From Ylistrum balloti (lineage: Eukaryota), in the NCBI RefSeq assembly GCF_031769215.1, contig NW_026782756.1:372001-436000 (forward strand): a stretch of 64,000 nt of DNA. The letters are read 5' to 3'. How positions within the stretch are numbered: the stretch's first letter is position 1; each line of letters begins with the position of its first letter. Made by a program: the position numbers and the translations under genes. This document shows, one piece after another, positions 4,484 to 53,300 of this stretch. The notes beneath the pieces were generated by a model, which searched no databases, was not told where the DNA came from, and worked only from the letters and a program-made list of their open reading frames with translations.

Positions 4484-4640
4484 TTTACATCCCCGCCTAG
4501 GAAAGTCCTTCTGCATCCCCGCCCGCAACAGAAAGCTTCATTACTCGTCTTCATAGTACTTCTACATCCCCGCCTGGAACAGAAAGTCTCATGACTCGTC
4601 ATTAACTGGCCTACATCCCCGCCTGGAACAGAAAGTCTCC
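4484..4640. repeat. Tandem duplications (about 49 bp, degenerating) of the profilin stop-codon region into its 3'UTR
   Basis: The core (t)acatccccgcc occurs near 4487, 4515, 4563 and 4612. The copy at 4562..4590 repeats ctacatccccgcctggaacagaaagtctc exactly. Confidence 0.85.
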
Positions 4641-5045
4641 GAGCTTCATCACCTGCTCATTACACTCCGACGCCACAGCGCGGGAATCATTAATACAAAT
4701 AAGAAGCAATGATTGCGTCCGACAAACGGTGCAGCCATATTCGTCCATTCGGGCGTATATACCCTGTTTGCCGTCCGCCAGACGGACTTCGTAATGCCGT
4801 CCACAGACTGTCACCCCATTTCTGTAAACTAGATCGGGGTACATCACTCCCTCTGCGATATGGCTTAGCTCACAAGCCTGGATCTTAAAATTGTCTGTGC
4901 CAATAATCAGTCGTTTAGTCCGACGGTCAAATATGGCCATCTGACATGAATTGGCCTCCACAATGTTCTCCAGCACATAATCCTCCCAAATTTTGAGGAG
5001 ATATTCTTCCTTCAGAGAAATACTGTCTATCCGTTGTAATTCCAT
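4611..5045 (-). CDS. Profilin-family protein (divergent, profilin-4-like), 144 aa, single coding exon
   Basis: Typical profilin length and motifs: WEDYV near the N-terminus, NGVTVCGRHY, GIYARMDEYGCTVCRTQSLLLI, and C-terminal helix VMKLGDFLFQAGM. A probable 5'UTR intron lies at about 5066..5165 (gtaag...acag). Confidence 0.8.
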   Translation of the reverse strand: MELQRIDSISLKEEYLLKIWEDYVLENIVEANSCQMAIFDRRTKRLIIGTDNFKIQACELSHIAEGVMYPDLVYRNGVTVCGRHYEVRLADGKQGIYARMDEYGCTVCRTQSLLLICINDSRAVASECNEQVMKLGDFLFQAGM

Positions 5046-8815: not shown

Positions 8816-10717
8816 ATGGCTACAGCAATCGGAATAGATTTGGGAACCACGTACTCGTGTGTTGGCGTATTTCAGCACGGAAAGGTGGAGATCATAGCAA
8901 ATGACCAGGGGAACAGGACCACGCCTAGTTATGTGGCGTTCTCAGAAACGGAAAGATTAATAGGAGACGCGGCAAAAAATCAGGTTGCCATGAATCCTGA
9001 AAACACAATATTTGATGCGAAAAGACTGATTGGACGAAAGTTTGATGACCAGACGGTGCAGTCGGATATGAAGCATTGGTCATTTAGAGTTGTTGATTGC
9101 GGCGGTAAACCAAAGCTACAGGTACAATGTAAAGGCGAGACCAAACAGTTCAACCCCGAGGAAGTTAGCTCCATGGTATTGACAAAACTGAAGGAAACTG
9201 CTGAGGGATATCTGGGTCAAAAGGTTAAAAATGCCGTCATAACGGTACCAGCCTATTTCAACGACGCTCAGAGACAAGCAACAAAAGACGCTGGCTTCAT
9301 CGCTGGACTTAATGTCCTGAGGATCGTCAACGAACCGACTGCCGCTGCTCTAGCATATGGCTTGGACAAAAACTTGAAAGGTGAGAAAAATGTTCTCATC
9401 TTTGATTTGGGCGGGGGAACGTTCGATGTATCTGTTCTGAGCATTGACGAGGGTTCCATGTTTGAAGTGAGGTCCACCGCCGGGGATACCCACCTCGGCG
9501 GGGAAGATTTCGATAACAGGGTCGTAAGCCATTTCATACAAGAGTTCAAAAGGAAGCATGGTAAAGACATGAGCAAGAACAGTAGAGCTGTCAGAAGACT
9601 GCGCACATCGTGCGAACGCGCCAAGAGGACACTGTCGAACAGTAGCGAAGCCAGCATTGAAATAGACGCTTTGTTTGATGGTGTTGATTTTTACAGTAAA
9701 CTGACGAGGGCGAGGTTTGAGGACTTGTGTGCTGACCTTTTCCGTGCCACTCTGTTACCGGTGGAAAAGGCGCTCGTGGACTCCAAGTTAGATAAATCAA
9801 GGATTCACGAGGTCATTCTCGTAGGAGGCTCCACACGTATACCGAAGATTCAGAAGCTGCTCCAGGAATTCATGAATGGTAAACCACTTAACAAATCAAT
9901 CAACCCTGACGAAGCGGTAGCATACGGTGCCGCCGTTCAGGCCGCCATTCTTACTGGCGACAAAAGTGACGTCATTAAAGATGTTCTGCTAATGGACGTG
10001 ACTCCCCTATCATTGGGAATAGAAACAGCGGGAGGTGTGATGACGAACTTAATAAACCGTAACTCAACCATCCCGACAAAGACATCCAAAACATTCACGA
10101 CATACTCGGACAACCAGCAAGGCGTCCACATTCAGATTTTCGAAGGAGAACGTGCTATGACCAAAGACAATAACCGGCTTGGAAAATTCGACCTCGACGG
10201 TATCCCCCCAGCTCCACGCGGTGTACCTCAGATCGAGGTCCAATTCGACATTGACGCGAACGGAATCCTAAACATCACCGCTGCAGAGAAAAACAGTGGT
10301 AAGACAAATAGGATTACTATCACCAATGACCAGGAACGTCTCAGTAAAGACGAAATCGAAAAAATGGTTGCCGACGCGGAGAAATATAAAGATGAGGACG
10401 ACAAACACAGGCAGCGAATTGCCGCAAGGAACCAGTTTGAGAATTACGTTTTCAGTGTAAAAACGGCGATAGAAAATGCGGGCGATAAACTTTCTGCGGA
10501 AGAAAGAGCTACTGTCAGCCAGAATTGTGACGAACAAATCAAGTGGCTCGACAATAACACAACAGCAGATGTAGATGAATTCGAGTACAAACTGAAGGAA
10601 TTTCAAAACCTGTGCACACCTGTCATGACTAAACTTCATGGGGGTGCCCCACAGGGTGACAGTGGGAAGGCTACCGATAGTAAGAGTGGTGGTCCTATAA
10701 TAGAGGAACTGGATTGA
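8816..10717 (+). CDS. hsp70: Heat-inducible cytosolic HSP70 (intronless, 633 aa)
   Basis: All three HSP70 signatures are present ([37 protein letters not shown]), plus RARFEDL. No introns, upstream HSEs, no GGMP repeats; ends GGPIIEELD. Confidence 0.98.
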
Positions 10718-37600: not shown

Positions 37601-39784
37601 ATCGTTCTCGTCGCTGATGGGGAATGAAGATTTCCTGACCATCAGGCAGTTTCACTTTCTGATTAATCATGGGAAGGGCACCTTTAAATTTACAAATAAA
37701 CAGTGAACAGTTTGAAATGTGATAAATACATATTAACTCCACCAGATTTAACATGATAAACATTCATACAGTTTTTATCACTATATGTGTACATGTGTCT
37801 ACCCTGTAATTTTTGATAATGTTGCCTTCATAAGATTGTCCATATTTTAAAGTTCTTACTTTGTGTTATGCTTAATATGATTATAATTAATAGGAAAAAA
37901 GGCCTTCAATTTGTCTATATTAATTCTTCTAGTACAAATATTCAAAATGCATTTTCTTAAGAAATTTCAACCCAGATATAATTTTTAGATCATTAGAATT
38001 GATCAGAGGTAAGGTAGTGTGGATACAACAATCATCTGTTTTTCATTACATTTAACAATTAAGTGCTTTCAGGACACAATTTTTTCCCATTATTTCACCA
38101 TTCCTAATATACACATTACTATTGCCTGTTCTATATTCACCTGTCTGCGTGTTGCCTGGAGAAGTTGATGGTGGTAGTGGAGCAGGAGTAGACACAGTTT
38201 TCTTGTAGGTGAGATACCAGGTGAAAAAACTCTGCATACAGTGTTGAGGAATACCACTGTATTCTCCCTGTAAAAACTGGGTAGCAGTAGCAAATGTCTG
38301 ACCTGGAAACAGAGACATTGCTATCACAGATAACAACTGCTTGCTGTTTGATGTGAGTAATGTACATGTAGAAGCCTATAGTGACTACTATTGGTGTATG
38401 TCTAATAAATATGATTTTACTATGGTACAATGAGAAGATCTGTTACTGAAATATTGTAAACCTACATATTTTAGTGGTACTCATATTTCAAAGCGAAAGT
38501 ACAGAGCTGAAATATTATTCCTGTCAGTTGCAGTTACTGCATGCTGTTTATATTGCAAACACTGTATATGCAAATATATCAATGTGTCAAATTGCTGAAA
38601 TGTGATCGTGCTTCAATTTAATTTAGTTCCTAGGTACCAGCGTAATATAAATAAACTGGTACCCATCCAACATACAACAGATATCTGTCATATACATACC
38701 CTTGTATACACCCATCATACCACAAATTTCTGTAATTTAATTATATAACTAATCCTTATAACTTCAATCACTCACCTGTCATGGTAGCAAGCTGTCCCAG
38801 CTGTACGTTGTACTGGGTTATAAACCAGCGAACCTCATCACCAGCCTTCTGGATACCTTGTCTGTTAGTGACATGTAAAATTTAGTGGTTTATCATTATA
38901 CAATCTATTAATATATTCTATTTGTTCCATTAAGGAACAAAATCATTTTTTTTTTAGGTTTGTTGGGGCCGATAATGATCCCTCTTCCTGCAGAAATTAT
39001 TTCATGTTAACACCAAACTCCCAAATTTTGCAATTTATTCCTCAAATTTTACTCCCTTGTTCGCCAATTTTCTTTCCAAAATGAGGGGAAATTGACCTGT
39101 ACAAAACCACTGAAAAGAAAACCCTGAAAATCTTATCATTCAGGGTCATGAATTTTTTATCTTGAGAAGGAAAAATACCTACTTTAAAAATTCTCGTAGC
39201 TCAGTCGCTATTTCCTCAGAGATGTTTGATATGGAAGCTGATGAGCTGGTGTTGCTATTGTCCTCATCAGTGACACAGTTAACTGTTGTGTCTATATCAT
39301 CTACCAAGCTTAAGTCTATGGTTTCAGTGCGTGCTCGTTTAGCTATCTGTCTTTCAGGGAAAGCTGCCTGAGATGGTGTACGTGAATTTGCGGTCATTGA
39401 CACAGGGTACACTTGACTGGATGAATGTGATCTGTACCCAGATATATTGTGTGACTGGGAGGCAGGGACATTATTTGCCTGTGTGGATGACAGTGAAAAC
39501 TGATGATCTCCATGGCCTGTTCCAGAATGGCTTGTCCTGGTGGCATTTGGTGTTGATGTACGAGGATGGAGGGACTGGGCAGGATTACGGCCTGCAGGCA
39601 CAGCTGACTGAGACAGGGATACAGGAACACTATACAACAGTCCTAACTCATTGTCTAAACGGTCAAATGAATCAAATGCCTGTGCCACCTCCTCTTTGGT
39701 AATGCCGCTGTTCCTCAGCCGCCGTATCAATTCAATCTGCTCTATGGAGAACATTTGTCTGCCACCGCCAACACGTCCTGACAT
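34682..39784 (-). CDS. HMBOX1: Homeobox-containing protein 1-like (HNF1-class/HMBOX1-like), 6 coding exons, about 440 aa
   Basis: Exons 39784-39183, 38861-38776, 38302-38141, 37681-37481, 37333-37235 and 34854-34682 join in frame at GT-AG. N-terminal FSIEQIELIRRLRNSGITKEEVAQAFDSFDRLD matches the HMBOX1 N-terminus as recalled. A POU-like region (LGQLATMTG...FFTWY) and an extended homeodomain (RRERFTFREKHLEVLETCFNENAYPSHEQREAISHMCN...VTPHMVLNWFANRRKE) follow. The true ATG is 39784; the ORF track starts at a TTG. Non-coding exon donor near 40259; polyA signal near 33723..33728. Confidence 0.9.
35085..36250. repeat. 27-bp minisatellite (ataatgccaattaactggctctctcct), about 40 copies with a 546-bp higher-order duplication; degenerate tail to about 37100
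   Basis: Directly visible. The unique spacer cctatttgcctgtaatggcagtcaactg... occurs at 35021 and 35567. It explains the IMPINWLSP ORFs. Confidence 0.97.
38945..39126. mobile_element. Small MITE-like repeat, related copy at about 17605-17765
   Basis: Both sites share ggggccgataa...aaaatgagg.aa. This copy ends in aaaaccctg, a CAGGG-type terminus. Confidence 0.35.
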
Positions 39785-40379
39785 GGTCCCCAAACCTCAT
39801 GGGTTGGATGATTGCTGTACAGCTCCAGAATACAATTGCTTCACTGCAAGCAATGAACAATACTCACGAAATCTGTATTTTATAAAATGTATACATATAA
39901 AGACTTAATTACAATGCTGTGTTTTTTTCAAGTTATAGATAAGCACAATAAAGGCATAATAAAGGAGTAATTGAATACAACGTCAGAAGAAGGTTGTATG
40001 CTAGTTAAAGTCGGTTTGGCCTGCTATGCGGCTGGAGTGTTATATCATCCATCATTTATTGTATTAATGCTATGACATATTCACTCTATCTATAAACAAA
40101 TATATTTCATACTGCATTTTATGTCAAAGTAATAGAGCATTCATTTCCAAGATCTAACACTTTAAACCATCGCTAATCACTGCCCTTTGTTCCGTGTATA
40201 TTTTACATCGCACTGGCCTCTTTGTTATAACCAGTGCCTCTGGTTGTTAGTCATTTACCTGCAGCGTAAATACTTTCGATTTTCTTCATTCCATGTGCAT
40301 CCCACTGATTCGATTACTAATTAATTACCTACAAAAAAGACTTAACCTCCAGAACCTAGTTAGGCGTCTCCATCTTGAA

Positions 40380-41000: not shown

Positions 41001-41221
41001 CAGCAGTAGTCTGGAGCAACCAACGATGTCTTCCGCGGCAGTGTGAATGTTGTGTAGTTTCGGGATGAGAGCTTGCCAAGATGAACTGGGGGAGTCGGTA
41101 AGCGACCATGTCTCTGAACTGGTGCAGGCATGCAGGTAAAAGATCCATATAGTGTACTATGAAACAAAGACAGGTTCATAAATCGACATACCACGGTGAT
41201 TGTTAGCCCAAATAATAAATC

Positions 41222-44200
41222 ATGAATACCGAGCAGTCAGATGTGATTGAAAATTCCGTGACTGTGGAAATCAAAGACAAGACGGAAGACATCAACCAAT
41301 TTGATTCTGTGTCAAATGTGCGTTCTCAGCCGGATAGATCAAGAGAAATGGTATCAAAGCAGGCACTGAAAGATTCAACGAATACACAACACATGGACAG
41401 TAACAAACGAGTGGAGGGAGGAGGCACAACACAGAGCCATGAATCGGCACCATATGTGGCTCCCCCTCAAAAAATAAAAAAGATGAAGAGAGGGATATTC
41501 ATTTCTTACTCTCCAGATGCTGGGTTTGTTGAGAGGAAGTTTGTGGTGGACACAGTGCGGCAGCTGAAGGAAAACAATCTTGCAGAAGACATTTGGTTTG
41601 ATAAAGATGAAAAAAATACTGACAGTCCAGTGTGGTTCTCTTTGCGCATGGAGGCAGTGGAAAAATGCCGGGCCTCCATTCTCTTCTTTTCCCCAAGTTA
41701 CTTTTCTTGTCCTGTGTCAATGTATGAAAGTAAAACACTTCTACAAAGACGACGACAAGATCCACACTCTGTAGCCATATTTCCCATTATCTTCTCATCA
41801 TTAGACAACACTGAAATTCCAAAAGATTATTTTTTATTAATAAAACATGCTGTAGATTTAAGTAAAGACCATGTAAAAAAGAGTCTAGCTGAGAAAACGT
41901 CTGTTGTGATAGGGGGTATCATGGAAGAGCTAGATAAATATGCCTCCATGAACATCCCCCCTACACCTGTGACACCACCTGACACAGAGTTCACAGAAGA
42001 GTACAAAAAGAAAAAGATATGTCAGTGGAGTGCTAGTGATCTACAGGAATGGCTCTTCAATTTGGGAATAAAGGAATTTTATCGTCAAAGTTTGGCTGAA
42101 AATATGGTGGATGGATTTCTCCTGATGTCACTGACTGACCATGACATGATACAACACCTTGGAATTGATAGTCGTGTAGTTCGCAAAAAAATCATGCAGC
42201 AGATTCTTATTACTCTGGACTCTGAACACAAACAGAAAGACAACTGGCATCTACGAGCACGTGCTCTGCGTGCCAAACCTGATGTCATCTATCTGGTGTA
42301 TGATCCTGCAGATGTCCGTCTTGCACAGAACCTCAAAGCTGACTTAAAGAAGAAAAATCTGCAGGTAAGATACCTCAGTTGTACCAAGTAATTAAATTCA
42401 AAGTACGATTCAATTTCACAGTTCATGTTTTTCAAATATATGAAGCTGTGTCTGTTATGAGTACTGCTTTTCAAATATCTTAAAACTTGTAGAGTGGGTG
42501 CCCCAAGATGAAAATATATGATCGTCACTGAAATGGTTTGATTTTACTTACCGACTTAAGTAAAAAAAATAGCACTTATCTGCTGTCTCATGAATAAAAC
42601 ATTTCTGACAAAAAGTAATGAAATAACAAAAGCTGACAAACACTATTTAGCAAGTTACAGTAATATGCTTGGTACTGTCATATACTGACGCACTGTAACA
42701 CTCACATACTGACAAACCATAACACTCACATACAGACAAACTATAACACTCACATACTGACGCACTGTAACACTCACATACAGACAAACCATAACACTCA
42801 CATACAGACAAACTATAACACTCACATACTGACAAACTATAACACTCACATACAGACAAACTATAACAGTCACATACTGACAAACCATAACACTCACATA
42901 CAGACAAACTATAACACTCACATACTGACGCACTGTAACACTCACATACAGACAAACTATAACAGTCACATACTGACAAACTATAACACTCGCATACAGA
43001 CAAACTATAACAGTCACATACTGACAAACTATAACACTCACAAACTGACGCACTGTAACACTCACATACAGACAAACCATAACACTCACATACTGACAAA
43101 CCATAACACTCGCATACAGACAAACCATAACACTCACATACTGACGCACTGTAACACTCACATACAGACAAACCATAACACTCGCATACAGACAAACCAT
43201 AACACTCACATACTGACGCACTGTAACACTCACATACAGACAAACTATAACACTCGCATACAGACAAACTATAACACTCACATACTGACGCACTGTAACA
43301 CTCACATACAGACAAACCATAACACTCACATACAGACAAACTACAGCAGTTACAACTGCAAACTAGAACAGTTACACTTTGATAATAATAACAATCACAC
43401 TGACAAGTTATGTAGCAGTCACACTCAAACTGACAGTCACACAGAGAAAAATTTGGATGTGCGATAGCACTTAATATATAAAATTATAGATGTGTTTTTA
43501 TGTATTTTTTTCTGTTTTAGCTGTCTATCAGAATCATTCAGTTGTGAACTTAGAAAGTTTGTATTTTACTTGTCAAAACCAAAATCATGTCCAAATGTAA
43601 ATGGCTTATCCCAGTAGCGTATGTATATGATTGTTGTTTTACTGTATTTAAACATTAATGTGACGTTTGCTACAGAAGTTCATTACTTTAAAAACTATTT
43701 AAGAAATAACAACCAATAAGAAGAAATGATAAAAGTCTTCAATACCACAGATAAAATGGAGCACTCTTCCATAATGATATGTTTGTCAACTGTACCTTAA
43801 GTTCAAGAAAAACATTTCTGAAGTCAACATGAATTACGTGTTTTCACTTCTGCCTAGTAACATACAACTAGTAATTTATATTGGCAAAATAGAAATCATA
43901 GAAACTCATATAAGTAAACCATGTCATTCTTGTTATTTTTTCATCATTGAGTAAAACAATTTAAATTGAAGCAGAAGAATTTATAAAATTGCGGATTATG
44001 TGTTTTTGATAGCTGTTAGTATTACTAGTTTCACAACCTTACAAGGTTTAATGTTGACAGTTTTATCATTCAGAACTGTGTTCTGAATTTTTATAAAATT
44101 GTCTTCATGTTAGTCATAAATTTCCTCAAGTTAAATAACATTGGCATGAAATAGGATAAAGATTGAACAGGTCTGCATGTTATAAATTAAGATGAATCAT

Positions 44201-47200
44201 CTACAAGCTTTATTACATTTGATCAGGGAGATATGGGGAATGTTGGGCATGACAAAAGTGTCTGCAATTAATATACAGTTGATTATAATGTCACAATATA
44301 TGCTTGTATGCCTTTAATGTTGACCGTTGTACTACTGTTTACAATCTCGAGATGTCATGTTGGTTAACCTTGGAGTCTAAATTTAGAAATACAACTATTA
44401 TTAATGTAATACCATAGATAATAATAAACAAAACATTTGATATCACAGATCTAAAGAGATATCAAGAGCTTCTTCAGCTAAACAATGTAACCCATGCTGT
44501 ATAAGCATTTATGTTTTAAGACAATCTGCCCTATGTCAACATTGACTTACTGTACATAGCATGGTTTCATATTACTTGACAGGGTGTTAAAGTGGAACTT
44601 ATAATGATAACAATAGATGTTTTGTAGCAAATTTATTATGATTTACTTAGCAGTATTAAAAATATACATTCTTTCTTTAATTTAACGTCTATTTTTTATT
44701 TTTATTTTTTACCGTTTCTTATTGTAAAAATTGAAATGATATTATTGAAGGAGTGATCTGGCCATTAGTCATTGAGAATTAAGTCATAAAATGAAAGTTA
44801 AAATTTTCTTGCCTCCCATTGCAGATATTACAGTGTCAAAATCAGCACAATATTTAGCTAAAGGTGCTTTTAGGAGTATGGTTTCTCCTCTTCACAATTA
44901 AACTAAAAGTGTCTACTTGAGCAAGAACTTTTTTTTTCATATTATAAGTCTTTATAACAATATTGGGTCAACAATATTGAGTCCTTATGATTTATAACGA
45001 GGTGTAATTATAACGTTCTAGGTTGTTAATGAAAGTCTCAGTTAACATGGCATTTAGTATTGCCTATAAAGATCACAATAAATTGTCTCTGTCCAGGATA
45101 CATATTTTTATGGGTATTAGGTTCAACGTACTGACAACATTTACAAAAGCAATGTGTGTTACCATGTGTTGAGTATTGACACAGAGAAATATCTATCATC
45201 AAACAAACTACAGCACTCTATCTTCACAGGAGTATGTCAGATTTGATAAGCACATGAAGTTGAATGTTTTAAATATTGGTTTTTATTTTACAATTTCTAT
45301 GTTGAAGAGATTATCTGCGGCCCTTATATTATACCTTGGTGACCACCAAGTTGATCACAATCCGAGTTTAATTGACAATGTTTGTTACTTCAGTCGTAAG
45401 ATGTGCTGAAAACATGGTAAGGCACATTCTTTCATGTGAGGCCAACAACAGTGTTATTTAGATGTCAGTTTTATCCTTCACCAGTCTATTATGCCATATG
45501 TGAAAGTCCATTGTGTTTGCCCATTGATACCAGAAGAGATCGTCAAACAAAGCATGCCTTTCAGAGACCAATCCTACTGTAGAAACATATGATAAAAAAT
45601 CTATTTTTTTCATTACCCTTATTTTAAGACAGTTTGACATGAGTGACATCAACGCTCTTATTTCTGGTAACCATTTATGCCAGTTCTGTTCATTAATATT
45701 GATTTCAACAGAAATGAGTTGATTGTATGAATTCAATTGTATTTTTTATTTGTGAACTTGAGATTAATTTTATAATGTAAATATAAAATTAAGGATAAGT
45801 GGACAAAAGTTCACACATTGAATTTTGAATTTATATACAAATTATATTTATATTGTATTTTGATAAGCGTTTACATGCCAAGCTTGAATTAATTTTGATA
45901 AGGAAATCATTGTCAGAGAACATAAAATACATATAGGTGAAATATTCCTTCTTTCATATTAAGAGCATATAACTACTTGAATTTAACATGCTTAGTTTGA
46001 TTATATTTTACACTTGATAGTCTGTGAAAGGGAAGGGTCTCAGTTACTTAAAGTCCTCAATTTTCATGGGACTCAAACTTTTTTCATTGTACTTAAGAAT
46101 TCTACTCCTGAAAAATTTATCTTAAGTTTTGAACCGTTCATTATTTGGTCCACTAATAATGAAAGCTCGGGAACTATATGTACTTTATCTATCTGTCTGT
46201 CCATGCATTTGTGACAAAGTTTTTCTGCACTCTAGTGGCTTCATTGGATGAGGGATTATCATAAAACTTTACACAATTACATAAAAAAAACAACCTTGAA
46301 CAGTTCTGAGTTTCCGAGTTGATGAGTCAAAATCATTTATCATTTTCTAAAAACCTTAGTCAGTTCTCTGGGGGCTTCATTCCTTATGGGATCAAGTCAG
46401 CTCAAACACTTATAAATGACCGTAATACTGTTTTTAGAAAATTGTTATCATTGTTCAAGCAATAATCAATATGTTTGTGATTCATGGATTCATGGATTTA
46501 GAAGGACCAGTGAATGAAGGAGAATAAATGCCCCACAAAAATGATAGATTTTGTAGTAAGTTATCAACTCTATAATACATTGTCTTACAAGTGGTTGAAA
46601 CAATTCTGTGACAAGTACCAATAAGGATGAACATATGATGAAATGAGATATGACAGCAGAAGCAATGTGACCTGACATGAGTTCATTAGTCGTAATACCT
46701 TCCTCTTTATGACCATAATTTATTGAAGCAGGGACTGTAGTAAGTCTACCCACATCTTCTGGCTATTCCATAGAATTACCAACAAATGCTATTTCACTGT
46801 CACATAATAGCGAGGACCCTTACTTCAGGGGTAATGTGTCTCCTGACAATTTTTTCTGCTGTTGCAAATTTACAGTCCTTTACCTAATGCAGCTATAAAT
46901 GAATGTATGTTAATAGAAACAATTATTAATTAAAGTTTTTTCAAATATTTCCAATTTATTTTAGTAAATTACCAAAAAAAAGTGATTTTTTGAAAGTTCA
47001 AATGTAATAAAAATGTGTAAACTACATGTAATTTTAGTTCTGTATTTCAATCAGGTGATTTTAAAATTGAACTTTTGAGTCAACAGCTGAGTATAATTAA
47101 AAAGAAACAACATGTTTTGGTGGAAATTGAAAGTGATAAAAGCATAAATGGATGTATTCAAGAATACGTTGAACATTCATATTGAAATTTCAAGAAAGGC

Positions 47201-50200
47201 CTGTTATAAAGCAATAGTGAATGCATGTTTGATATTTTGGCAAACAAGTAAGACCTAATCAGTACTTGGTCAGCTACCCTATATCTCAGTGACAGATCTG
47301 CAAACTAATCTACCTTAATACAAGTGCAACATACACAATTATATATATATAATCCCATGTTGGTATGTGTGAATATTATTCTATGGCACAAACGACAACT
47401 CACTTTAAAGGATATTGTTAATGAGTTTATCACTAAAGTTTTTTCTCTTTCTAATCATGTCATGGTCACTGTGTTGATTTAGCTGTGTATGGTATTTATC
47501 ACTGTATGTATAACATTACCCACTGACTCACAGAATGGATGTTGACATTAGCGATAAATTGTTCATGGGACAAGAGTTCATTCAGGTTTACAATAGGTAT
47601 CCAGTTTTGTGGATCAACAATCAAAGTTTACAGCGGTGTTATGACACAGGCGTTTCAGTCAACACTGTTTCTATTGAATGTAGTCTATCAATTTTCTAAG
47701 TGATCCTTGATAAATGTTATTTGATATCAACTTCTCTGCCACATATCGTACCTGTGTAGGCTGGTCACAGCTCCATTACTACATAGTTCACCTTATCAAA
47801 CTGTGAGATATTTTTAATGCGGAGAGTGTCGGATGGAAAGGGTTAATAAATAGATAGTTAAAATCCTATACAGGTATTACACACATCAAGATTACCTAGT
47901 GAAAGATACCAATTACTAGCGTATAAATTAGATGTTAAGATTCAAAAGAATCATATTCTTAACCCAGAAAACTTAATTAAAAAGATTGGGATCCTTTTAA
48001 AGAAATATGACCATGAAATACACGCACTACTTATTTACTGGTTTGAGCCATACATAATGTTTAGTTATTGACTAGTCGTGCAGACAACAAATCAAATATA
48101 CAAGTAATCAATCAGAAAGTACCCATGAAAGGCTAATTCAATTAAAAAGATATCAACGACTCCTAAGCATTCTCAACATATTATCGTTATCCCCATTAAT
48201 AGTAATTTAATTTTATTGTTCTGTTATCGATCAATTAGTCTTGAAGATTTTTTTTCTTTGAGCGATTGAATAATTGCCTGGTTAACCCTGTGTTTATTTG
48301 TGTTTTGAAGAGAGCTAGAAGGATGTCTACTTTATTTCCCTTAATATTTAACAAAATTTGACTCTATTTCAAGCAATGTCATATTATGTATTTAATATCA
48401 ATATGGTTTCTTAATAATAAAAATGCTGAATCGAGGTTTGAAAGTCTTTCTTTCCAGATACATGACACAAACTGTTCAAATGTGCGGTAGTGGCACATAA
48501 AATCATACCAGTATACACGTGCAGCCAGAGAATGTAAGATGATATATGTATCTTGTTTAATTGTTAGCTTTGGAAGCATGTTGTGCAGATGACTTCCTGC
48601 ATTTTTAATGGTTTTTATGAAATGACTTTGTATGAGTTATCTACCTTGGTTTGTTTTTGTATTCTAGGTGCTTCACCATGACAGTATGAAGCTAGGAAAG
48701 TCAAAGGAAGAGTTCCTGCTCATAAATGGTCCAGTCATGGCGACATCCTCCCAAATTGTGGTCCTTCTAACAGAAGCTTCCACCACCTCTCCATTTGTCT
48801 TCCATGAAGTCTTGTTTGCAGACTGGCTAGGCAAGAAACTTGTCACTGCCATGTTTAAAAATGTCTGGATGAATTTCAGAGCTTCTCTCAAAGCGGTGCT
48901 GGGTAAGTAAATCAGTTAACAGTAATTAATATGATAGTAAAAGGAAGTAATATTAAGTGAAAAGCAGTCACATAAACATCTTGAGAAACAAGGTCCAGTG
49001 TGCATAACCAGTTAATATAGAATAGAAACATGACTCCAAAACCAATGGTTGATATTTCACTATTTGTGTCGGACATCTATTGAAAAATTACACGAGTTTC
49101 TGATATTAACAGGTGAATGCCCTTCTGTGGATTTTGAAACCAAAATGTATAATGAGAGTCTTGATGTGTTGGAGCACCATATCAAACCCTTAAGGCGAGT
49201 TCCAGGTGTGGTCCTTGAACAGGCGTACCTCAACAAGATGGCAGAGGGCCTAAAACCCCTTGAGGTCCTTGGCACTGTTTCACCAGGTAAAAAACTGCTC
49301 ACAACTTTCTGATAGCTAAAAAACATTAAATATTGTTTGTGAATTAGGTAATTCTAATAGGTGTCTGGTCAATACTAATTGTAGGAATGTTTTATCATTT
49401 AGACATATCTGTGTACTGATCTAGGAGCATCAAGTTTTAATCATCTCATAGTACCAATGTTCAATCTGTCCTGGTGTATATAGTTATTATACTAAATGTG
49501 TGACATCATTTTAGGTTCTGATTGAAGCTTCTTTTACTCTCATGGAAATCAGACCAGCACTTCCTGAATCTCATGTAATGCGCTAGGTGCAATGTTGTCG
49601 CCCTGACAAGATTACAATTTTATTTTTTATTTTGTTGTAAGGAAAAGAGGAGACTAGATATTAATATGAAACGTACTTCTAATTTTTTACATACATCAAG
49701 AAAACAATGTCAACCTACTAAATTGACCTTGTAACTTATTTTTTGCTATACTTTGAATTTATGTTCACGTCTGAAGAGCAAGTGTGATAGATTTATCATA
49801 GTATACACTACAGTGTTATACAATGATAATAAATTTGTTTCTGTGTACAGGTGGAACCCATTCTCAGTACTACAAGGAAGGTGAACCTCAAGTATTTATC
49901 AGTTACCAGTGGGATATGCAAGGGAAAGTGCTTGACATCAAACAAATGCTTGAAAACAATGGTCTTCAGTGCTGGGCAGATATCACAATGGCTAGTACTA
50001 CCCAACCACGTGGTCACAGTAGCAAGAGTAGCCGCAGTAGTGTAACACTGCTGGAGGTTGGGGGCGAGACATTGCAGAGTCAGATCCAGCGAAACATGAA
50101 GGCCTCAGCTGTAGTGGTATGCTGCATCACCCCGAAATACCTCCAGAGTGACAACTGCAAGAAAGACCTAACTCTGGCCGAGACATTCAACAAACCAATC

Positions 50201-50371
50201 ATTCCTGTACTCCTCAGGTTCTCTCCCCTTGAAAGTGCACCAGACCAGGTGCGAAAGATTATTGCCAAATATAGTTGTGTGGATCTGAGTAATGACCGCC
50301 TTTACAAACAGCACATGGCAGCAGTACTGGAGAGAGTGAAAAAGTATGTAGTGCCACGGGGATACAGCTGA
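41222..50371 (+). CDS. TIR-SAM-TIR-TIR multidomain protein, 4 coding exons, 690 aa
   Basis: Exons 41222-42364, 48668-48902, 49113-49286 and 49851-50371 join in frame (2073 nt). TIR1: GIFISYS...IWFD...FFSPSYFSCPVSMYE. SAM: QWSASDLQEWLFNLGIKEFYRQSLAENMVDGFLLMSLTDHDMIQHLGI. TIR2: IYLVYDPAD...IVVLLTEASTTSPFVFHEV...KKLVTAMF. TIR3: VFISYQWD...CWADI...VVVCCITPKYLQSDNCKKDL...KPIIPVLL. Confidence 0.88.
42662..43360. repeat. 24-bp minisatellite (ataacactcacatacagacaaac[c/t] and variants), about 28 copies, in intron 1 of the TIR-SAM gene
   Basis: Directly visible. It explains the YSLSVCEC and VSVMVCLY ORFs. Confidence 0.97.
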
Positions 50372-53300
50372 TTATTGAGGGCATTTATACCGGACGTTAT
50401 GTGATATTTTGTAAAGTTTATGTTTATATACACAGACCTAAGGTTTTTTTCCCAAAATTTGAGCCTGAAGAAATCTTAGCATTCAATACTTTATAAACAC
50501 TCCAGGAATTTGATCTTGTGCAGTATAGATGTGTGGACTATATTTTCAGATCACAGGCCAAAAGCTAATTCAGGTAATGGGGTCACCTTGAAATTTTACA
50601 CAACTAATTAACCTTAATTTCCTTTCTCACCGAGTTATATTATAACTATGTATATATTGTCTAAGTTTTACAACACCTATCTGATAATGTAATACTTCTA
50701 ATAATTTTGACCTATGACCTATATTGAAAGGTTGTGGAAACTGGAGTTCAGTCTAAAGAAATAAAAATCACAAGTTTCCTCACTGTTTGAAGACTTCTAA
50801 CAATTAAATATTAAAATGGCATATAAACAGCAGTGCCATCAATTAAATTAATACAAGGAGATAAGACCTTGTAGATAGTAACCAAACATGTTAAAGTGAC
50901 TTTGTATTGTTTGTGCTGCAACACTATCACAACAAACCCCTGCAATGCAATGATGTGTGATTGATATGAATGACACGGCACACTTTTCACCAAGTATCCT
51001 CTGAAACGTCTAAAAATCTGTATACTATCATGGAAGAATTCTTTTGTACATGTGAAATATCAAGGTTATGGCTGTGATTATTATAGTGATATTTGGTTGT
51101 ATTTGTGTAATTTTAAAACTTCATTGGTATATATGTGTGTCAGTTGTGTGTATGGTACATTTGTACCATATGTGTGTTTTAAATGTGCTGTGAATGTTAC
51201 CCTATGACTAGAAGATTATAATAGTTGTACACATTTATTTTTTGTACAGAATATATGTTCTTGTATGTATAAATAAACTGTAAGAATATACTTTACAATT
51301 TTTTAGAATTTATTTTCAAATTCGGGACTGTTTTAAGAAAAAATGTTTCTTTTGACATGTTTGATTGTGATGATCTTTTCCATATCAGCTGTCCGTGATA
51401 GAAAGTCCTTCTTGATTAATTCTTACATGTTTTATACTAATTTTACAGTATTTGTTGGTGATAACATTTTGATGATATTAAAGATATTATTTTAAGTAAT
51501 GCCTGGAATGATACTATTACAGAAGAGTGACAAGTTATCATACTAGATTAACATTCATTACCTGGTAACTTATTGTGAATAAAACCATTAAAACAAAAGT
51601 TGTATCTAATATGAAATATTAGTTAATAAAATATTTATATTTGACAAAACCATATTTTAAAGTTGAGGTTACCATAACGAATGCTACATGTAAACATTAC
51701 CTAAATCAATGCTTAATGCATTTCGTAACTGAACATATTCTTTCGCCCATTAAGGCAAAAATATGAGAAATCTCTTGCAAAGGTTGGAAGTATCTACAAA
51801 AGTTATTTGGGGGTGAAAGGACAAAATTAATTCAGACAGTTATAAGTCATTATGTTTTCTCAGTTAAAGAACTTTATTTTGTTTGCAAAATTCTGCTTCA
51901 CAGCTATGATGATCATATCCAAACAGAAACCAAGGTATAGATATACTGTGCTGAGCCTTCAAGTACAACAACTCAACCAAGGTTGTCTTTTGTCTCTGAA
52001 TATCATCATGATTCAATTCTCAAAATCAATGACTTTACTCAGCTCCAAGCTATAATTTGTCTTCTCTACACTGTGGTTTGAAGTTACAGAGACATATATG
52101 TCATGTATCTACTTCAGTCTAGTGGAACCATCTCATAAGTTGAGGAATCTATAAATATGAGTGATTATTATGAATTAAGTGAAATGATGATAGTGAGACG
52201 TTTGTATGTATGTAATGTAGAATCTTGGATGCCTGATATTTGGTATGTGTACCACTACAAAATAATTGGAACTTTGTTAGTCTGTACACTTAGTGATGTG
52301 TGAAAAGTGAAATGTTAAGATTGTGATATCTTTGATATCAAAAAGCCATTGAATAACATAATTTCACACTTAGAAGATGTTTAAGTTTTAAAATCAAGTT
52401 TTTTCACTAACAAATAATTACTGATTCAAATAGATTTTACTCTAGATTCAGCTGATGACCATACCTTGATCATGTTTTTATACTAAACCAGTGGTGAAAT
52501 AGAAGACCGTAATAATATTTGTGTTTGATTTTGAAATATCTACTTTCAGTTAAATTCGATAAAATGAATGTTAATAAACAGATAACATGTTTCATTTATT
52601 TTCTGGTAAATTTGATAAAGGTAATAAAAAAGTCCGGGTTTAATGTTACTATTTTTTACGTATGCAGCACCTTCATTAGTTTTTTGAGTTTTTTGGTTAC
52701 ATGTGATTTAAAGTAACACAAGAATTGTGAAAATTACAGATCTTGCCTAAGACTTGAGTTTAAACATGAGAATAGTTTCAAGATTTCTTACCCGAGAGTA
52801 GATAGTTTTATATGTTGTCAATTAAATTATGTCTTCCACAGTGTGTGTAAAGATTAACTGTTTTCAGTGATAATTGATTGTGATTTATCAAAGTGTTACT
52901 TACCAATAATATTTGACAGATTCTAGAATCTCAGCCGTTTTGTTGTAAAATGTAATTTACACAATTTGGGGGGTTTATTGAGCTAACGAACTATTTCATT
53001 TTTCTGTTCTGTGTTGAAATAATGGGTTCATCCAAATTTCTGGTATAGTAATTAAACAGCTGATACCCATTTACACTGTGATTTAATACAGTTTAAAATC
53101 TATACAATAAAGAGTTCCTCTGGTACTGTGTATACCTGAGAATCTATTCAATATTTTCTTTGTTTTGTGTACAGATACAAAGATACCATATAAATATTGG
53201 ATATCCTTTCTATCATGTACATGTGTGAAATTTGTATTGCGTATGTACACATGTTATTCCATCTTTAAGAAGGGATCCCTCATATATTATGTATAGATAC

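What the first reader, a model, noticed from the sequence alone, without database searches (positions are those of the whole stretch)
41222..50371. TIR-SAM-TIR-TIR protein: a candidate self-contained, SARM1-like NAD-consuming immune enzyme with an unfamiliar architecture
Seen: the spliced 690-aa product has a disordered N-terminus, then TIR, SAM (about aa 266-330), TIR, TIR, with no LRR, ARM or transmembrane segment. All three TIRs align in register with the S-x-x-Y-x-x-S-x-W-C-x-x-E-L helix: TIR1 SPSYFSCPVSMYES (E169), TIR2 TEASTTSPFVFHEV (E428) and TIR3 TPKYLQSDNCKKDL (D623). Known: this Glu is catalytic in SARM1, plant and bacterial TIR NADases, and SAM oligomerisation activates SARM1 (ARM-SAM-SAM-TIR). 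Inference: SAM polymerisation could assemble two catalytic TIRs and one regulatory TIR into an NAD+-degrading or signal-producing complex. I do not recognise this domain order as a characterised animal protein.
Basis: partly seen in the sequence, partly recalled or inferred. Interest (0 to 1): 0.85.

Follow-up and report, generated by a model that had tools for sequence, protein, structure and literature searches.

The report
Ancient three-TIR, SARM1-type SAM protein
This is a real, intact scallop gene for a cytosolic protein with three TIR domains around one SARM1-type SAM domain; the same gene is already annotated, but never studied, in animals from sea anemones to lungfish, so whether it destroys NAD+ like SARM1 remains an open, testable guess.

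Summary
Four exons with GT-AG introns (41222-42364, 48668-48902, 49113-49286, 49851-50371, + strand) give a 690-aa protein. It is identical to RefSeq XP_060083267.1, an "uncharacterized protein" of the scallop Ylistrum balloti.

- **Domains:** All three TIRs and the SAM are real. Pfam calls TIR1, SAM and TIR3. The middle TIR scores below Pfam's threshold, but its AlphaFold model matches solved TIR domains (Z 15-16).
- **Acidic residues:** E169, E428 and D623 sit at the same place in the αC helix. They are conserved in 42, 41 and 41 of 42 orthologues.
- **Link to SARM1:** The SAM is specifically like SARM1 SAM1 (E 5e-15). TIR3 has the SARM1 TIR fold (Z 17.9), but Asp replaces the catalytic Glu. 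TIR1 is closest to MyD88 and TLR2.
- **Not a new architecture:** Orthologues occur in cnidarians, lophotrochozoans, echinoderms, hemichordates, amphioxus, tunicates, reedfish and lungfish. An amphioxus "TIR-SAM" cDNA was reported in 2008, and the Aplysia orthologue was listed as a "SARM" in 2022.
- **Function:** I found no functional study. NADase activity is plausible, most of all for TIR2, but it is unproven. A conserved Glu is not enough to show it.
- **Selection:** dN/dS is 0.015 and each species has one orthologue, which points to a conserved cell-biological role rather than a fast-evolving immune gene.

The parts
41091..41221 (+). 5' UTR, at least this much, contiguous with exon 1
   Evidence: The transcript-like contig L002 of a related scallop aligns without a break from 41091 into the CDS.
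41222..42364 (+). Exon 1 (aa 1-381): disordered N-terminus, TIR1, SAM and the first strand and helix of TIR2
   Evidence: ORF; donor CAG|gtaaga; Pfam TIR_2 at 92-216 and SAM_2 at 269-328.
41222..41482 (+). Disordered N-terminal region (aa 1-87), variable in length between species
   Evidence: pLDDT below 50 over residues 1-87; unconserved columns in alignment A1; dN/dS 0.076 against about 0.01 elsewhere.
41483..41941 (+). TIR1 (aa 88-240), MyD88/TLR2-like; the invariant E169 codon lies at 41726-41728
   Evidence: Pfam TIR_2 E 5e-9; profile against PDB gives MyD88 1e-4 and TLR2 3e-3; pLDDT above 90; E169 in 42 of 42 orthologues.
41999..42229 (+). SAM domain (aa 260-336), SARM1 SAM1-type
   Evidence: Pfam SAM_2/SAM_1; profile against PDB gives SARM1 SAM1 at E 5e-15, well ahead of liprin and Shank; 74% mean column identity.
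42266..42364 (+). Start of TIR2 (aa 349-381; βA, αA and the start of βB) at the end of exon 1
   Evidence: AlphaFold secondary structure: strand 352-359, helix 362-377, strand βB 381-384 beginning at the last codon of exon 1.
42365..48667 (+). Intron 1 (6303 nt), containing a 24-nt minisatellite at 42678-43343
   Evidence: GT..AG ends; tandem repeat of 27.8 copies.
48668..48902 (+). Exon 2 (aa 382-460): TIR2 from βB through the BB loop, αB, βC, αC and βD to αD; the E428 codon lies at 48806-48808
   Evidence: Acceptor ttctag|GTG and donor G|gtaagt; E428 in 41 of 42 orthologues.
49113..49286 (+). Exon 3 (aa 460-518): TIR2 βE and αE plus two extra helices (496-514)
   Evidence: Splice sites; secondary structure.
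49851..50371 (+). Exon 4 (aa 518-690 plus stop): TIR3; the D623 codon lies at 50165-50167
   Evidence: Acceptor tgtacag|GT; Pfam TIR_2 E 4.7e-17; SARM1 TIR Z 17.9 over model residues 529-683; D623 aligned to SARM1 E642.
49979..50071 (+). Disordered Ser/Arg-rich insert in the BB loop of TIR3 (aa 561-591) with the conserved motif RGHSSxSxRSS
   Evidence: pLDDT below 50 over 564-589; the motif is conserved in nearly all bilaterian orthologues (R571, S574, S577 and R579 at 90% or more).

Best explanation
The locus is the Ylistrum balloti orthologue of an ancient animal gene found once per species. It encodes a soluble protein laid out as disordered N-terminus, TIR1, SAM, TIR2, TIR3.

**Shown here**
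- The gene model is intact.
- There are three TIR folds.
- The SAM is specifically related to SAM1 of SARM1.
- The three TIRs are of different kinds:
  - TIR1 is closest to the scaffold TIRs of MyD88 and TLR2.
  - TIR2 is a cryptic TIR that Pfam scores below threshold, and it is the most conserved domain.
  - TIR3 has the SARM1 TIR fold, but carries Asp at the catalytic-Glu position and a disordered Ser-rich insert in its BB loop.

**Inferred mechanism**
- The SAM drives homo-oligomerisation, as in SARM1.
- That concentrates the TIRs so they form the head-to-tail contacts that switch TIR domains on.
- TIR2 is the best candidate for an NAD+-cleaving site. It keeps equivalents of SARM1 Y568, K597, L598, K602 and F603, an aromatic residue at W638, and E642.
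- TIR1 more likely docks onto other TIR proteins.
- TIR3 more likely acts as a regulatory or scaffolding partner. Its conserved RGHSSxSxRSS loop is a possible phosphorylation switch.

Whether the output serves immunity or a SARM1-like cell-autonomous stress or death programme is unknown.
For: - **Gene model:** Confirmed and identical to the RefSeq protein. Exon joins are seen in an mRNA-like contig of a related scallop.
- **TIR folds:** The full-length model has pLDDT above 90 in all four domains. TIR2 alone matches TIR structures at Z 15-16, with Foldseek top hits on SPARTA and SARM1 TIRs. TIR3 matches the SARM1 TIR at Z 17.9, rmsd 2.1 Å.
- **SAM:** Hits SARM1 SAM1 at E 5e-15.
- **Register of the acidic residue:**
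  - It is the 6th residue of αC in all three domains.
  - It lies 11 residues before βD in TIR2, TIR3 and SARM1.
  - TIR2 against TIR3 by hhalign gives E 2e-4 with E428 aligned to D623.
  - TIR3 D623 aligns to SARM1 E642.
- **TIR2 BB loop:** KLGKSKEEF aligns with SARM1 KLEAGKF.
- **Conservation:** E169 in 42 of 42, E428 in 41 of 42, D623 in 41 of 42. Mean column identity is 63% for TIR1, 74% for SAM, 75% for TIR2 and 47% for TIR3. dN/dS is 0.015.
- **Distribution:** From Nematostella to reedfish and lungfish.
Against: - No enzymatic, oligomerisation or expression data exist for any member that I could find.
- A Glu at this position is also present in TLR2-type scaffold TIRs (established knowledge). 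TirB and TirD of Dictyostelium keep it and show no NAD+ processing (PMC13142454).
- A direct profile alignment of TIR2 with the SARM1 TIR (E 0.004, probability 8%) chose a different register in αC, pairing W434 with W638 and K438 with E642. I rejected it only because it lays TIR2's predicted βD strand on SARM1's αC helix.
- The TIR2 profile finds no solved TIR by sequence.
- SARM1 needs two SAMs to form its octamer ring, and this protein has one.
- No RNA run of this species was available.
Confidence: 0.5

Rival explanations
1. It is a non-enzymatic adaptor or regulator. The protein is an oligomeric TIR scaffold that binds receptor or adaptor TIRs through TIR1, and perhaps the other TIRs, to relay or damp Toll/IL-1R-type signalling. 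This is the role proposed for other invertebrate-conserved TIR proteins and shown for the amphioxus TIR adaptors. On this reading the conserved Glu and Asp are structural.
For: - TIR1's closest solved relatives are MyD88 (E 1e-4), TLR2 and SIGIRR. Its invariant D127-K128-D129 aligns with the DRD of the MyD88 BB loop.
- TIR3 has Asp, not Glu.
- Conserved invertebrate TIR proteins are generally hypothesised to be adaptors or regulators (PMC6321704).
- The amphioxus adaptors bbtTIRA and bbtTIRC act as inhibitory TIR adaptors (PMC6043800).
- Keeping the Glu does not guarantee activity (PMC13142454).
Against: - The most conserved part is SAM-TIR2, not the MyD88-like TIR1.
- The SAM and TIR3 are specifically SARM1-like, and SARM1 is an enzyme.
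- TIR2 keeps several SARM1 BB-loop and αC residues.
- The gene survives in lineages with very different Toll receptor repertoires.
Confidence: 0.35
2. It is an enzymatic TIR with a different chemistry or substrate. One or more of the TIRs may act on something other than free NAD+, for example making nucleotide-derived signals or acting on nucleic acids as reported for some plant TIRs. An unknown downstream receptor would then read the product.
For: - The three divergent TIR types in one chain and the Asp variant in TIR3 are each conserved for hundreds of millions of years.
- Known TIRs have diverse outputs, and similar TIR sequences can make different ADPR isomers (PMC13142454).
Against: There is nothing specific in the sequence or the window: no partner gene, and no other TIR or sensor domain nearby. 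This reading is purely by analogy.
Confidence: 0.08
3. It is a gene-model artefact. Exon 1 (TIR-SAM) and exons 2-4 (TIR) would belong to two separate genes wrongly joined across the 6.3-kb intron.
For: - Many database entries stop at the end of exon 1, but these are prokaryote-style gene calls on genomic contigs.
- No RNA run of this species could be laid.
Against: - TIR2 spans the exon 1/2 junction and folds with pLDDT above 90.
- An mRNA-like contig of a related scallop joins all four exons at my exon borders to within 1-3 nt.
- Oyster transcript contigs of about 2.5 kb encode the whole 674-aa orthologue.
- Full-length colinear orthologues occur in more than 40 species.
Confidence: 0.02

Closest known systems
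SARM1 / C. elegans TIR-1 / Drosophila dSarm (ARM-SAM-SAM-TIR NAD+ hydrolase)
   Same: - The SAM domain is specifically SARM1 SAM1-like (E 5e-15).
- TIR3 superposes on the SARM1 TIR (Z 17.9, rmsd 2.1 Å).
- Full-length SARM1 chains align over SAM plus TIR3 at 20-22% identity.
- TIR2 shares BB-loop and αC motifs with SARM1.
- Both are soluble, occur once per species and are strongly conserved.
   Different: - There is no ARM autoinhibitory or NMN/NAD+-sensing domain; the N-terminus is a disordered stretch plus a MyD88-like TIR.
- It has one SAM instead of two and three TIRs instead of one.
- The SARM1-like C-terminal TIR has Asp where SARM1 has the catalytic E642.
- True SARM1 orthologues exist separately (for example P0115 and P0096).
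Amphioxus 'TIR-SAM' transcript (model Brafl1_131196; source of the database name 'Bf-TIR-SAM-like protein')
   Same: - It has the same TIR plus SAM combination, recovered as cDNA (PMC2575513).
- Elysia and Plakobranchus orthologues of this scallop protein carry the name 'Bf-TIR-SAM-like'.
- A Branchiostoma orthologue, P0183, has the same three TIR_2 stretches plus SAM.
   Different: Only the domain combination and its expression were reported. The paper gives no three-TIR description and no function. I did not verify that Brafl1_131196 is the same gene as P0183.
[quoted passage not shown] 2017
   Same: It is a cytosolic TIR protein conserved across invertebrate phyla with no assigned function, which is how that class is described in PMC6321704 and PMC8662601.
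   Different: - I could not read the defining paper, so I cannot say which family number, if any, this is.
- The class is described as absent from vertebrates, yet this gene has orthologues in reedfish and lungfish.
MyD88 / TLR-type scaffold TIR domains
   Same: The TIR1 profile hits MyD88 and TLR2 TIRs best, with a DKD motif aligned to the DRD of MyD88's BB loop.
   Different: There is no death domain, LRR or transmembrane segment, and TIR1 has Glu where MyD88 has Gln.

Membership tests
SARM1 family | N-terminal ARM-repeat autoinhibitory domain | tested here: not met
   Pfam finds no Arm repeat. Residues 1-87 are disordered and are followed directly by TIR1. True SARM1-like proteins in the same search do show Arm, two SAMs and a TIR (P0096).
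SARM1 family | Tandem SAM1-SAM2 forming the octamer ring | tested here: not met
   There is a single SAM at 260-336. It matches SARM1 SAM1 strongly (49 bits) and SAM2 only weakly (8 bits).
SARM1 family | C-terminal TIR of SARM1 type | tested here: met
   TIR3 against the SARM1 TIR gives Z 17.9, rmsd 2.1 Å over 126 residues. The profile search puts SARM1 as the best solved hit, though weakly (E 0.04).
SARM1 family | Catalytic Glu (E642) in the C-terminal TIR | tested here: not met
   D623 aligns with E642. It is Asp in 41 of 42 orthologues and Asn in one.
Catalytic TIR NADases in general | TIR (flavodoxin-like) fold | tested here: met
   All three domains model as TIR folds.
Catalytic TIR NADases in general | Glu in the αC helix at the catalytic position | tested here: inconclusive
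   E169 and E428 are in structural register. However, one direct TIR2-SARM1 alignment gave another register, no residue-level 3D superposition was available, and TIR3 has Asp.
Catalytic TIR NADases in general | NAD+ cleavage that depends on oligomerisation | not testable with these tools
   This needs biochemistry. An oligomerisation module (the SAM) is present.
ecTIR-DC families (Gerdol et al. 2017) | TIR protein conserved across invertebrate phyla and lacking vertebrate homologues | tested here: inconclusive
   It is conserved across Cnidaria, Lophotrochozoa and Deuterostomia. Orthologues also occur in Erpetoichthys and Protopterus. The defining paper is not held.

The most novel reading that the evidence does not exclude
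This family is a second, overlooked SAM-TIR NAD+-consuming lineage of animals and a sister to SARM1. Its catalytic module would be the cryptic middle TIR that Pfam misses. A MyD88-like TIR would provide the input, and a SARM1-like Asp-variant TIR with a phospho-regulated BB loop would act as the brake. The family has persisted from cnidarians to lungfish and reedfish and was lost in ecdysozoans, teleosts and tetrapods.
Probability: 0.3. Interest if true: 0.75.

Novelty: new variant of a known kind. Interest (0 to 1): 0.45.

Why it matters
SARM1 is the only animal TIR enzyme studied in depth, and it is a drug target in axon degeneration. A second, equally ancient and equally constrained SAM-TIR protein would be useful to the field. 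It has a different input end (a MyD88-like TIR instead of the ARM sensor) and three unlike TIRs in one chain. It would be a natural experiment in how TIR assemblies are switched on and kept off.

It would also show that TIR-based NAD+ signalling in animals is broader than SARM1, in the very phyla (molluscs, echinoderms, cnidarians) whose mass mortalities matter for aquaculture and reefs.

If instead it is an inert adaptor, it still marks a conserved node of invertebrate Toll-type signalling with no mammalian counterpart. For this window in particular, the gene is an ordinary, correctly annotated orthologue.

Tried and rejected
1. **RNA evidence in this species.** The run search found one strong holder, X6. 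Laying it showed even coverage of the introns, so it is genomic DNA. Intron 1 (6303 nt) is also longer than the 6000-letter limit for read laying, so the exon 1-2 joint could not be spanned. I relied instead on the mRNA-like contig L002 of a related scallop.
2. **TIR2 profile against PDB sequences.** It returned only a chance phage hit, so the fold had to be shown by structure prediction.
3. **Direct hhalign of TIR2 with SARM1 TIRs.** It gave a conflicting αC register. I rejected that register on secondary-structure grounds, but I record it here as a weakness.
4. **TIR1 against SARM1 by hhalign.** Only the βA strand aligned.
5. **The defining bivalve TIR paper (Gerdol 2017).** It is not held. 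The supplements of two citing papers gave no architecture table.
6. **Literature searches.** I searched by locus names, 'TIR-SAM', 'SARM-like', 'ecTIR-DC' and 'bbtTIRA/C'. They found only in-silico listings.
7. **Tandem family expansion.** I looked for other TIR or SAM copies in the window and found none.
8. **Transmembrane segment.** The single hydropathy peak is a buried strand of TIR2.

Full report
**1. What is in the sequence**

Between 41222 and 50371 on the + strand there are four coding pieces. Their borders are canonical:
- exon 1 ends CAG|gtaaga at 42364;
- exon 2 runs 48668-48902 (ttctag|GTG ... G|gtaagt);
- exon 3 runs 49113-49286 (taacag|GT ... G|gtaaaa);
- exon 4 runs 49851-50371 (tgtacag|GT ... 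TGA).

Joined, they give 2073 nt with one terminal stop, that is 690 aa. This product is identical to P0249, RefSeq XP_060083267.1, 'uncharacterized protein LOC132562537 [Ylistrum balloti]'. The Mizuhopecten yessoensis model is colinear, 690 aa long and 95% identical.

**2. Are the exons joined in RNA?**

- No RNA run of this species could be used. The only strong holder, X6, covers the introns evenly and is genomic DNA.
- Intron 1 (6303 nt) exceeds the 6000-letter limit for laying reads, so I did not try to span it.
- Indirect evidence is strong. A 3456-nt Logan contig from a related scallop (L002, protein in the same 90%-identity cluster as this one, 97% identical) carries an uninterrupted 691-codon ORF. 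It aligns to the window in four blocks: 41091-42366, 48666-48904, 49112-49287 and 49848-50373. These end at my exon borders to within 1-3 nt.
- The oyster orthologue is found on dozens of transcript-sized contigs of about 2.5 kb.
- TIR2 itself straddles the exon 1/2 junction and folds confidently.
- The 'two genes' rival is therefore negligible.

**3. Domains**

- **Pfam on the whole protein** gives TIR_2 in three stretches (E 4.7e-30) and SAM_2/SAM_1 at 268-328.
- **The middle TIR taken alone** reaches only 19 bits (E 0.002, cut-off 28). Its profile finds no solved TIR by sequence.
- **AlphaFold with 42 orthologues** gives mean pLDDT 81, with values above 90 across four compact domains:
  - TIR1, about 92-240;
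  - SAM, 260-336;
  - TIR2, 352-484 plus two helices running to 514;
  - TIR3, 532-684.
- **Disordered parts** are residues 1-87, 517-527 and 564-589.
- **TIR2 modelled alone** (pLDDT 86) matches TIR domains first in an unbiased structural scan: Hydra TRR-2 Z 15.8, IL-1RAcPb 15.7, SARM1 15.2, TIR-1 15.1 and MyD88 14.3. The related nucleoside deoxyribosyltransferase folds score lower, at 10-13. Foldseek agrees, with SPARTA and SARM1 TIRs on top.
- **TIR3 in the full model** matches the SARM1 TIR at Z 17.9, rmsd 2.1 Å, and SPARTA at 17.5.
- **No LRR, ARM or transmembrane segment** is present.

**4. The three TIRs are not alike**

They are barely alignable with each other by BLAST.

- **TIR1.** Its profile hits MyD88 (E 1e-4), TLR2 and SIGIRR, which are scaffold TIRs, and more weakly the plant enzyme RUN1. 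The invariant DKD at 127-129 aligns with the DRD of MyD88's BB loop. E169 aligns with a Gln of MyD88.
- **TIR3.** Its profile hits only SARM1, and weakly (E 0.04). The segment NCKKD-LTLA aligns with SARM1 WVHKE-IVTA, so D623 takes the place of E642.
- **TIR2 against TIR3** by profile-profile comparison gives E 2e-4 over 127 columns, with E428 opposite D623.
- **TIR2 against TIR1** puts E428 opposite E169.

Structure supports this register. In every domain the acidic residue is the sixth residue of the long αC helix that follows a short helix after βC. In TIR2, TIR3 and human SARM1 it lies 11 residues before the first residue of βD. The SARM1 numbering here was derived from the sequence printed.

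One result disagrees. A direct hhalign of TIR2 with two true SARM1 TIRs (E 0.004, probability 8%) slid αC by ten residues, pairing W434 with W638 and K438 with E642. That would lay TIR2's predicted βD strand on SARM1's αC helix, so I regard it as a local sequence coincidence. Only a residue-level 3D superposition would settle it.

In the N-terminal half of that same alignment, TIR2 keeps equivalents of these SARM1 residues:

| SARM1 | TIR2 |
|---|---|
| Y568 | Y360 |
| K597 | K389 |
| L598 | L390 |
| K602 | K394 |
| F603 | F397 |

With the structural register, F424 also takes the place of W638, and E428 that of E642. All of these TIR2 residues are invariant or at least 90% conserved, except K394, which the conservation lists do not include. 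That these SARM1 residues line its active site and BB loop is my recollection of the SARM1 literature, not something tested here.

**5. The SAM**

The SAM profile hits SARM1 SAM1 at E 5e-15 (59 bits) and C. elegans TIR-1 at 6e-12. The next families are liprins (6e-10) and Shank (2e-5). This is the firmest homology link to SARM1. Full-length SARM1 chains also align over SAM plus TIR3 at 20-22% identity. SARM1 has two SAMs and this protein has one, so the oligomer geometry cannot be inferred.

**6. Conservation and distribution**

A word-indexed search with the Mya orthologue and an exhaustive HMMER scan with exon 1 both recover a single family. Named members come from:
- bivalves and gastropods;
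- Lingula;
- annelids;
- a nemertean;
- a bryozoan;
- hemichordates;
- all echinoderm classes sampled;
- amphioxus;
- tunicates;
- Nematostella (720 aa, 40% identity, same layout);
- the vertebrates Erpetoichthys (646 aa) and Protopterus (partial).

No named hit is from an ecdysozoan, teleost or tetrapod. Many hits are unnamed, however, so absence is not proven.

Identity between scallop and deuterostome orthologues is 51-61%, 43-44% for tunicates and reedfish. Mean column identity by domain is 63% for TIR1, 74% for SAM, 75% for TIR2 and 47% for TIR3. E169 is invariant. E428 is Glu in 41 of 42 orthologues (Gln once), and D623 is Asp in 41 of 42 (Asn once).

Against the related scallop cDNA, dN/dS is 0.015 overall, 0.004-0.013 in the domains and 0.076 in the N-terminal tail. 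dS is about 1.2, near saturation. This is the signature of a tightly constrained gene found once per species. It resembles SARM1 more than the expanded, fast-evolving immune families of bivalves. No second TIR or SAM copy lies in the window.

**7.

TIR3 carries a disordered insert of about 30 residues exactly at its BB loop, between βB (558-560) and αB (592-602). The insert contains a motif, RGHSSxSxRSS, that is conserved in nearly all bilaterian orthologues even though the flanking insert varies in length. The BB loop is the element that mediates TIR-TIR assembly and gates the SARM1 active site (established knowledge). A conserved basic and Ser-rich motif at that spot is a plausible phosphorylation switch. 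This is inference only.

**8. What is known already**

- An amphioxus cDNA with the 'TIR-SAM combination' was recovered in 2008 (PMC2575513). That is presumably why sea-slug orthologues are named 'Bf-TIR-SAM-like protein'.
- The Aplysia orthologue LOC106011731 (P0165) was counted among three 'SARMs', purely by a TIR-plus-SAM rule (PMC9334734).
- Automatic UniRef names such as 'NAD(+) hydrolase SARM1' and 'ADP-ribosyl cyclase/cyclic ADP-ribose hydrolase' appear on several orthologues.
- Conserved invertebrate TIR proteins were classified by Gerdol et al. 2017 and are thought to be adaptors or regulators (PMC6321704). I could not read that paper.
- I found no experiment on any member.
- A 2026 preprint is a useful caution. 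Dictyostelium TirB and TirD keep the putative catalytic Glu but process no NAD+, whereas TirC does (PMC13142454).

**9. Verdict**

- The architecture and the kinship with SARM1 are real.
- 'Two catalytic TIRs plus one regulatory TIR' is a hypothesis. TIR2 is the most credible catalytic candidate and TIR1 the least.
- 'Immune' is unproven.
- The architecture is catalogued in public data, not new.

I rate it a variant of the SARM1-type SAM-TIR kind: interesting as an uncharacterised ancient family, ordinary as a locus.

**Earlier scan notes.** My identification agrees with it and was made independently. The scan had not, as far as its index shows, reported this gene before on other DNA.

Noticed in passing
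window 39179-39793 (-): The first coding exon of an HNF-1 homeobox gene (Pfam HNF-1_N) lies head-to-head with the TIR gene, about 1.3 kb from its 5' UTR. The same neighbour sits upstream in Mizuhopecten (L001), so the divergent pair, and possibly a shared promoter region, is conserved among scallops.
   Followed up: partly
window 8816-10717 (+): An uninterrupted 633-aa HSP70 ORF (Pfam HSP70, E 1e-253), which looks like an intronless, inducible-type HSP70 gene.
   Followed up: no
window 4611-5045 (-): A 144-aa ORF with a full-length profilin domain (E 7e-21).
   Followed up: no
window 42678-43343: A 24-nt minisatellite of 27.8 copies (86% matches) lies inside intron 1. It creates two spurious ORFs of about 225-230 aa of repeated 'SVCECY' on the minus strand.
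   Followed up: partly
proteins P0211 (Erpetoichthys) and P0092 (Protopterus): Vertebrate orthologues of this gene exist in a reedfish and a lungfish. [quoted passage not shown]
   Followed up: partly
window 50343/50344 (inside exon 4): RefSeq isoform X2 in three other scallops replaces the last residues from position 683/684 onward. At the matching place the window has AAAAA|GTATGT, a good donor-like site. That suggests an alternative terminal exon which changes only the C-terminal tail.
   Followed up: no
window 44839-45079 and 48537-49544: The DNA run X6 of the same species carries a 241-bp deletion allele in intron 1. Between 48537 and 49544 it has five base changes and a 1-nt deletion, all of them intronic. 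None falls in exons 2-4.
   Followed up: no
protein P0054 (Bryopsis sp., green alga): A 673-aa algal protein with two TIR_2 stretches and two SAM domains was a weak hit (E 6.5e-26) to exon 1. This is a TIR-SAM combination outside animals.
   Followed up: no
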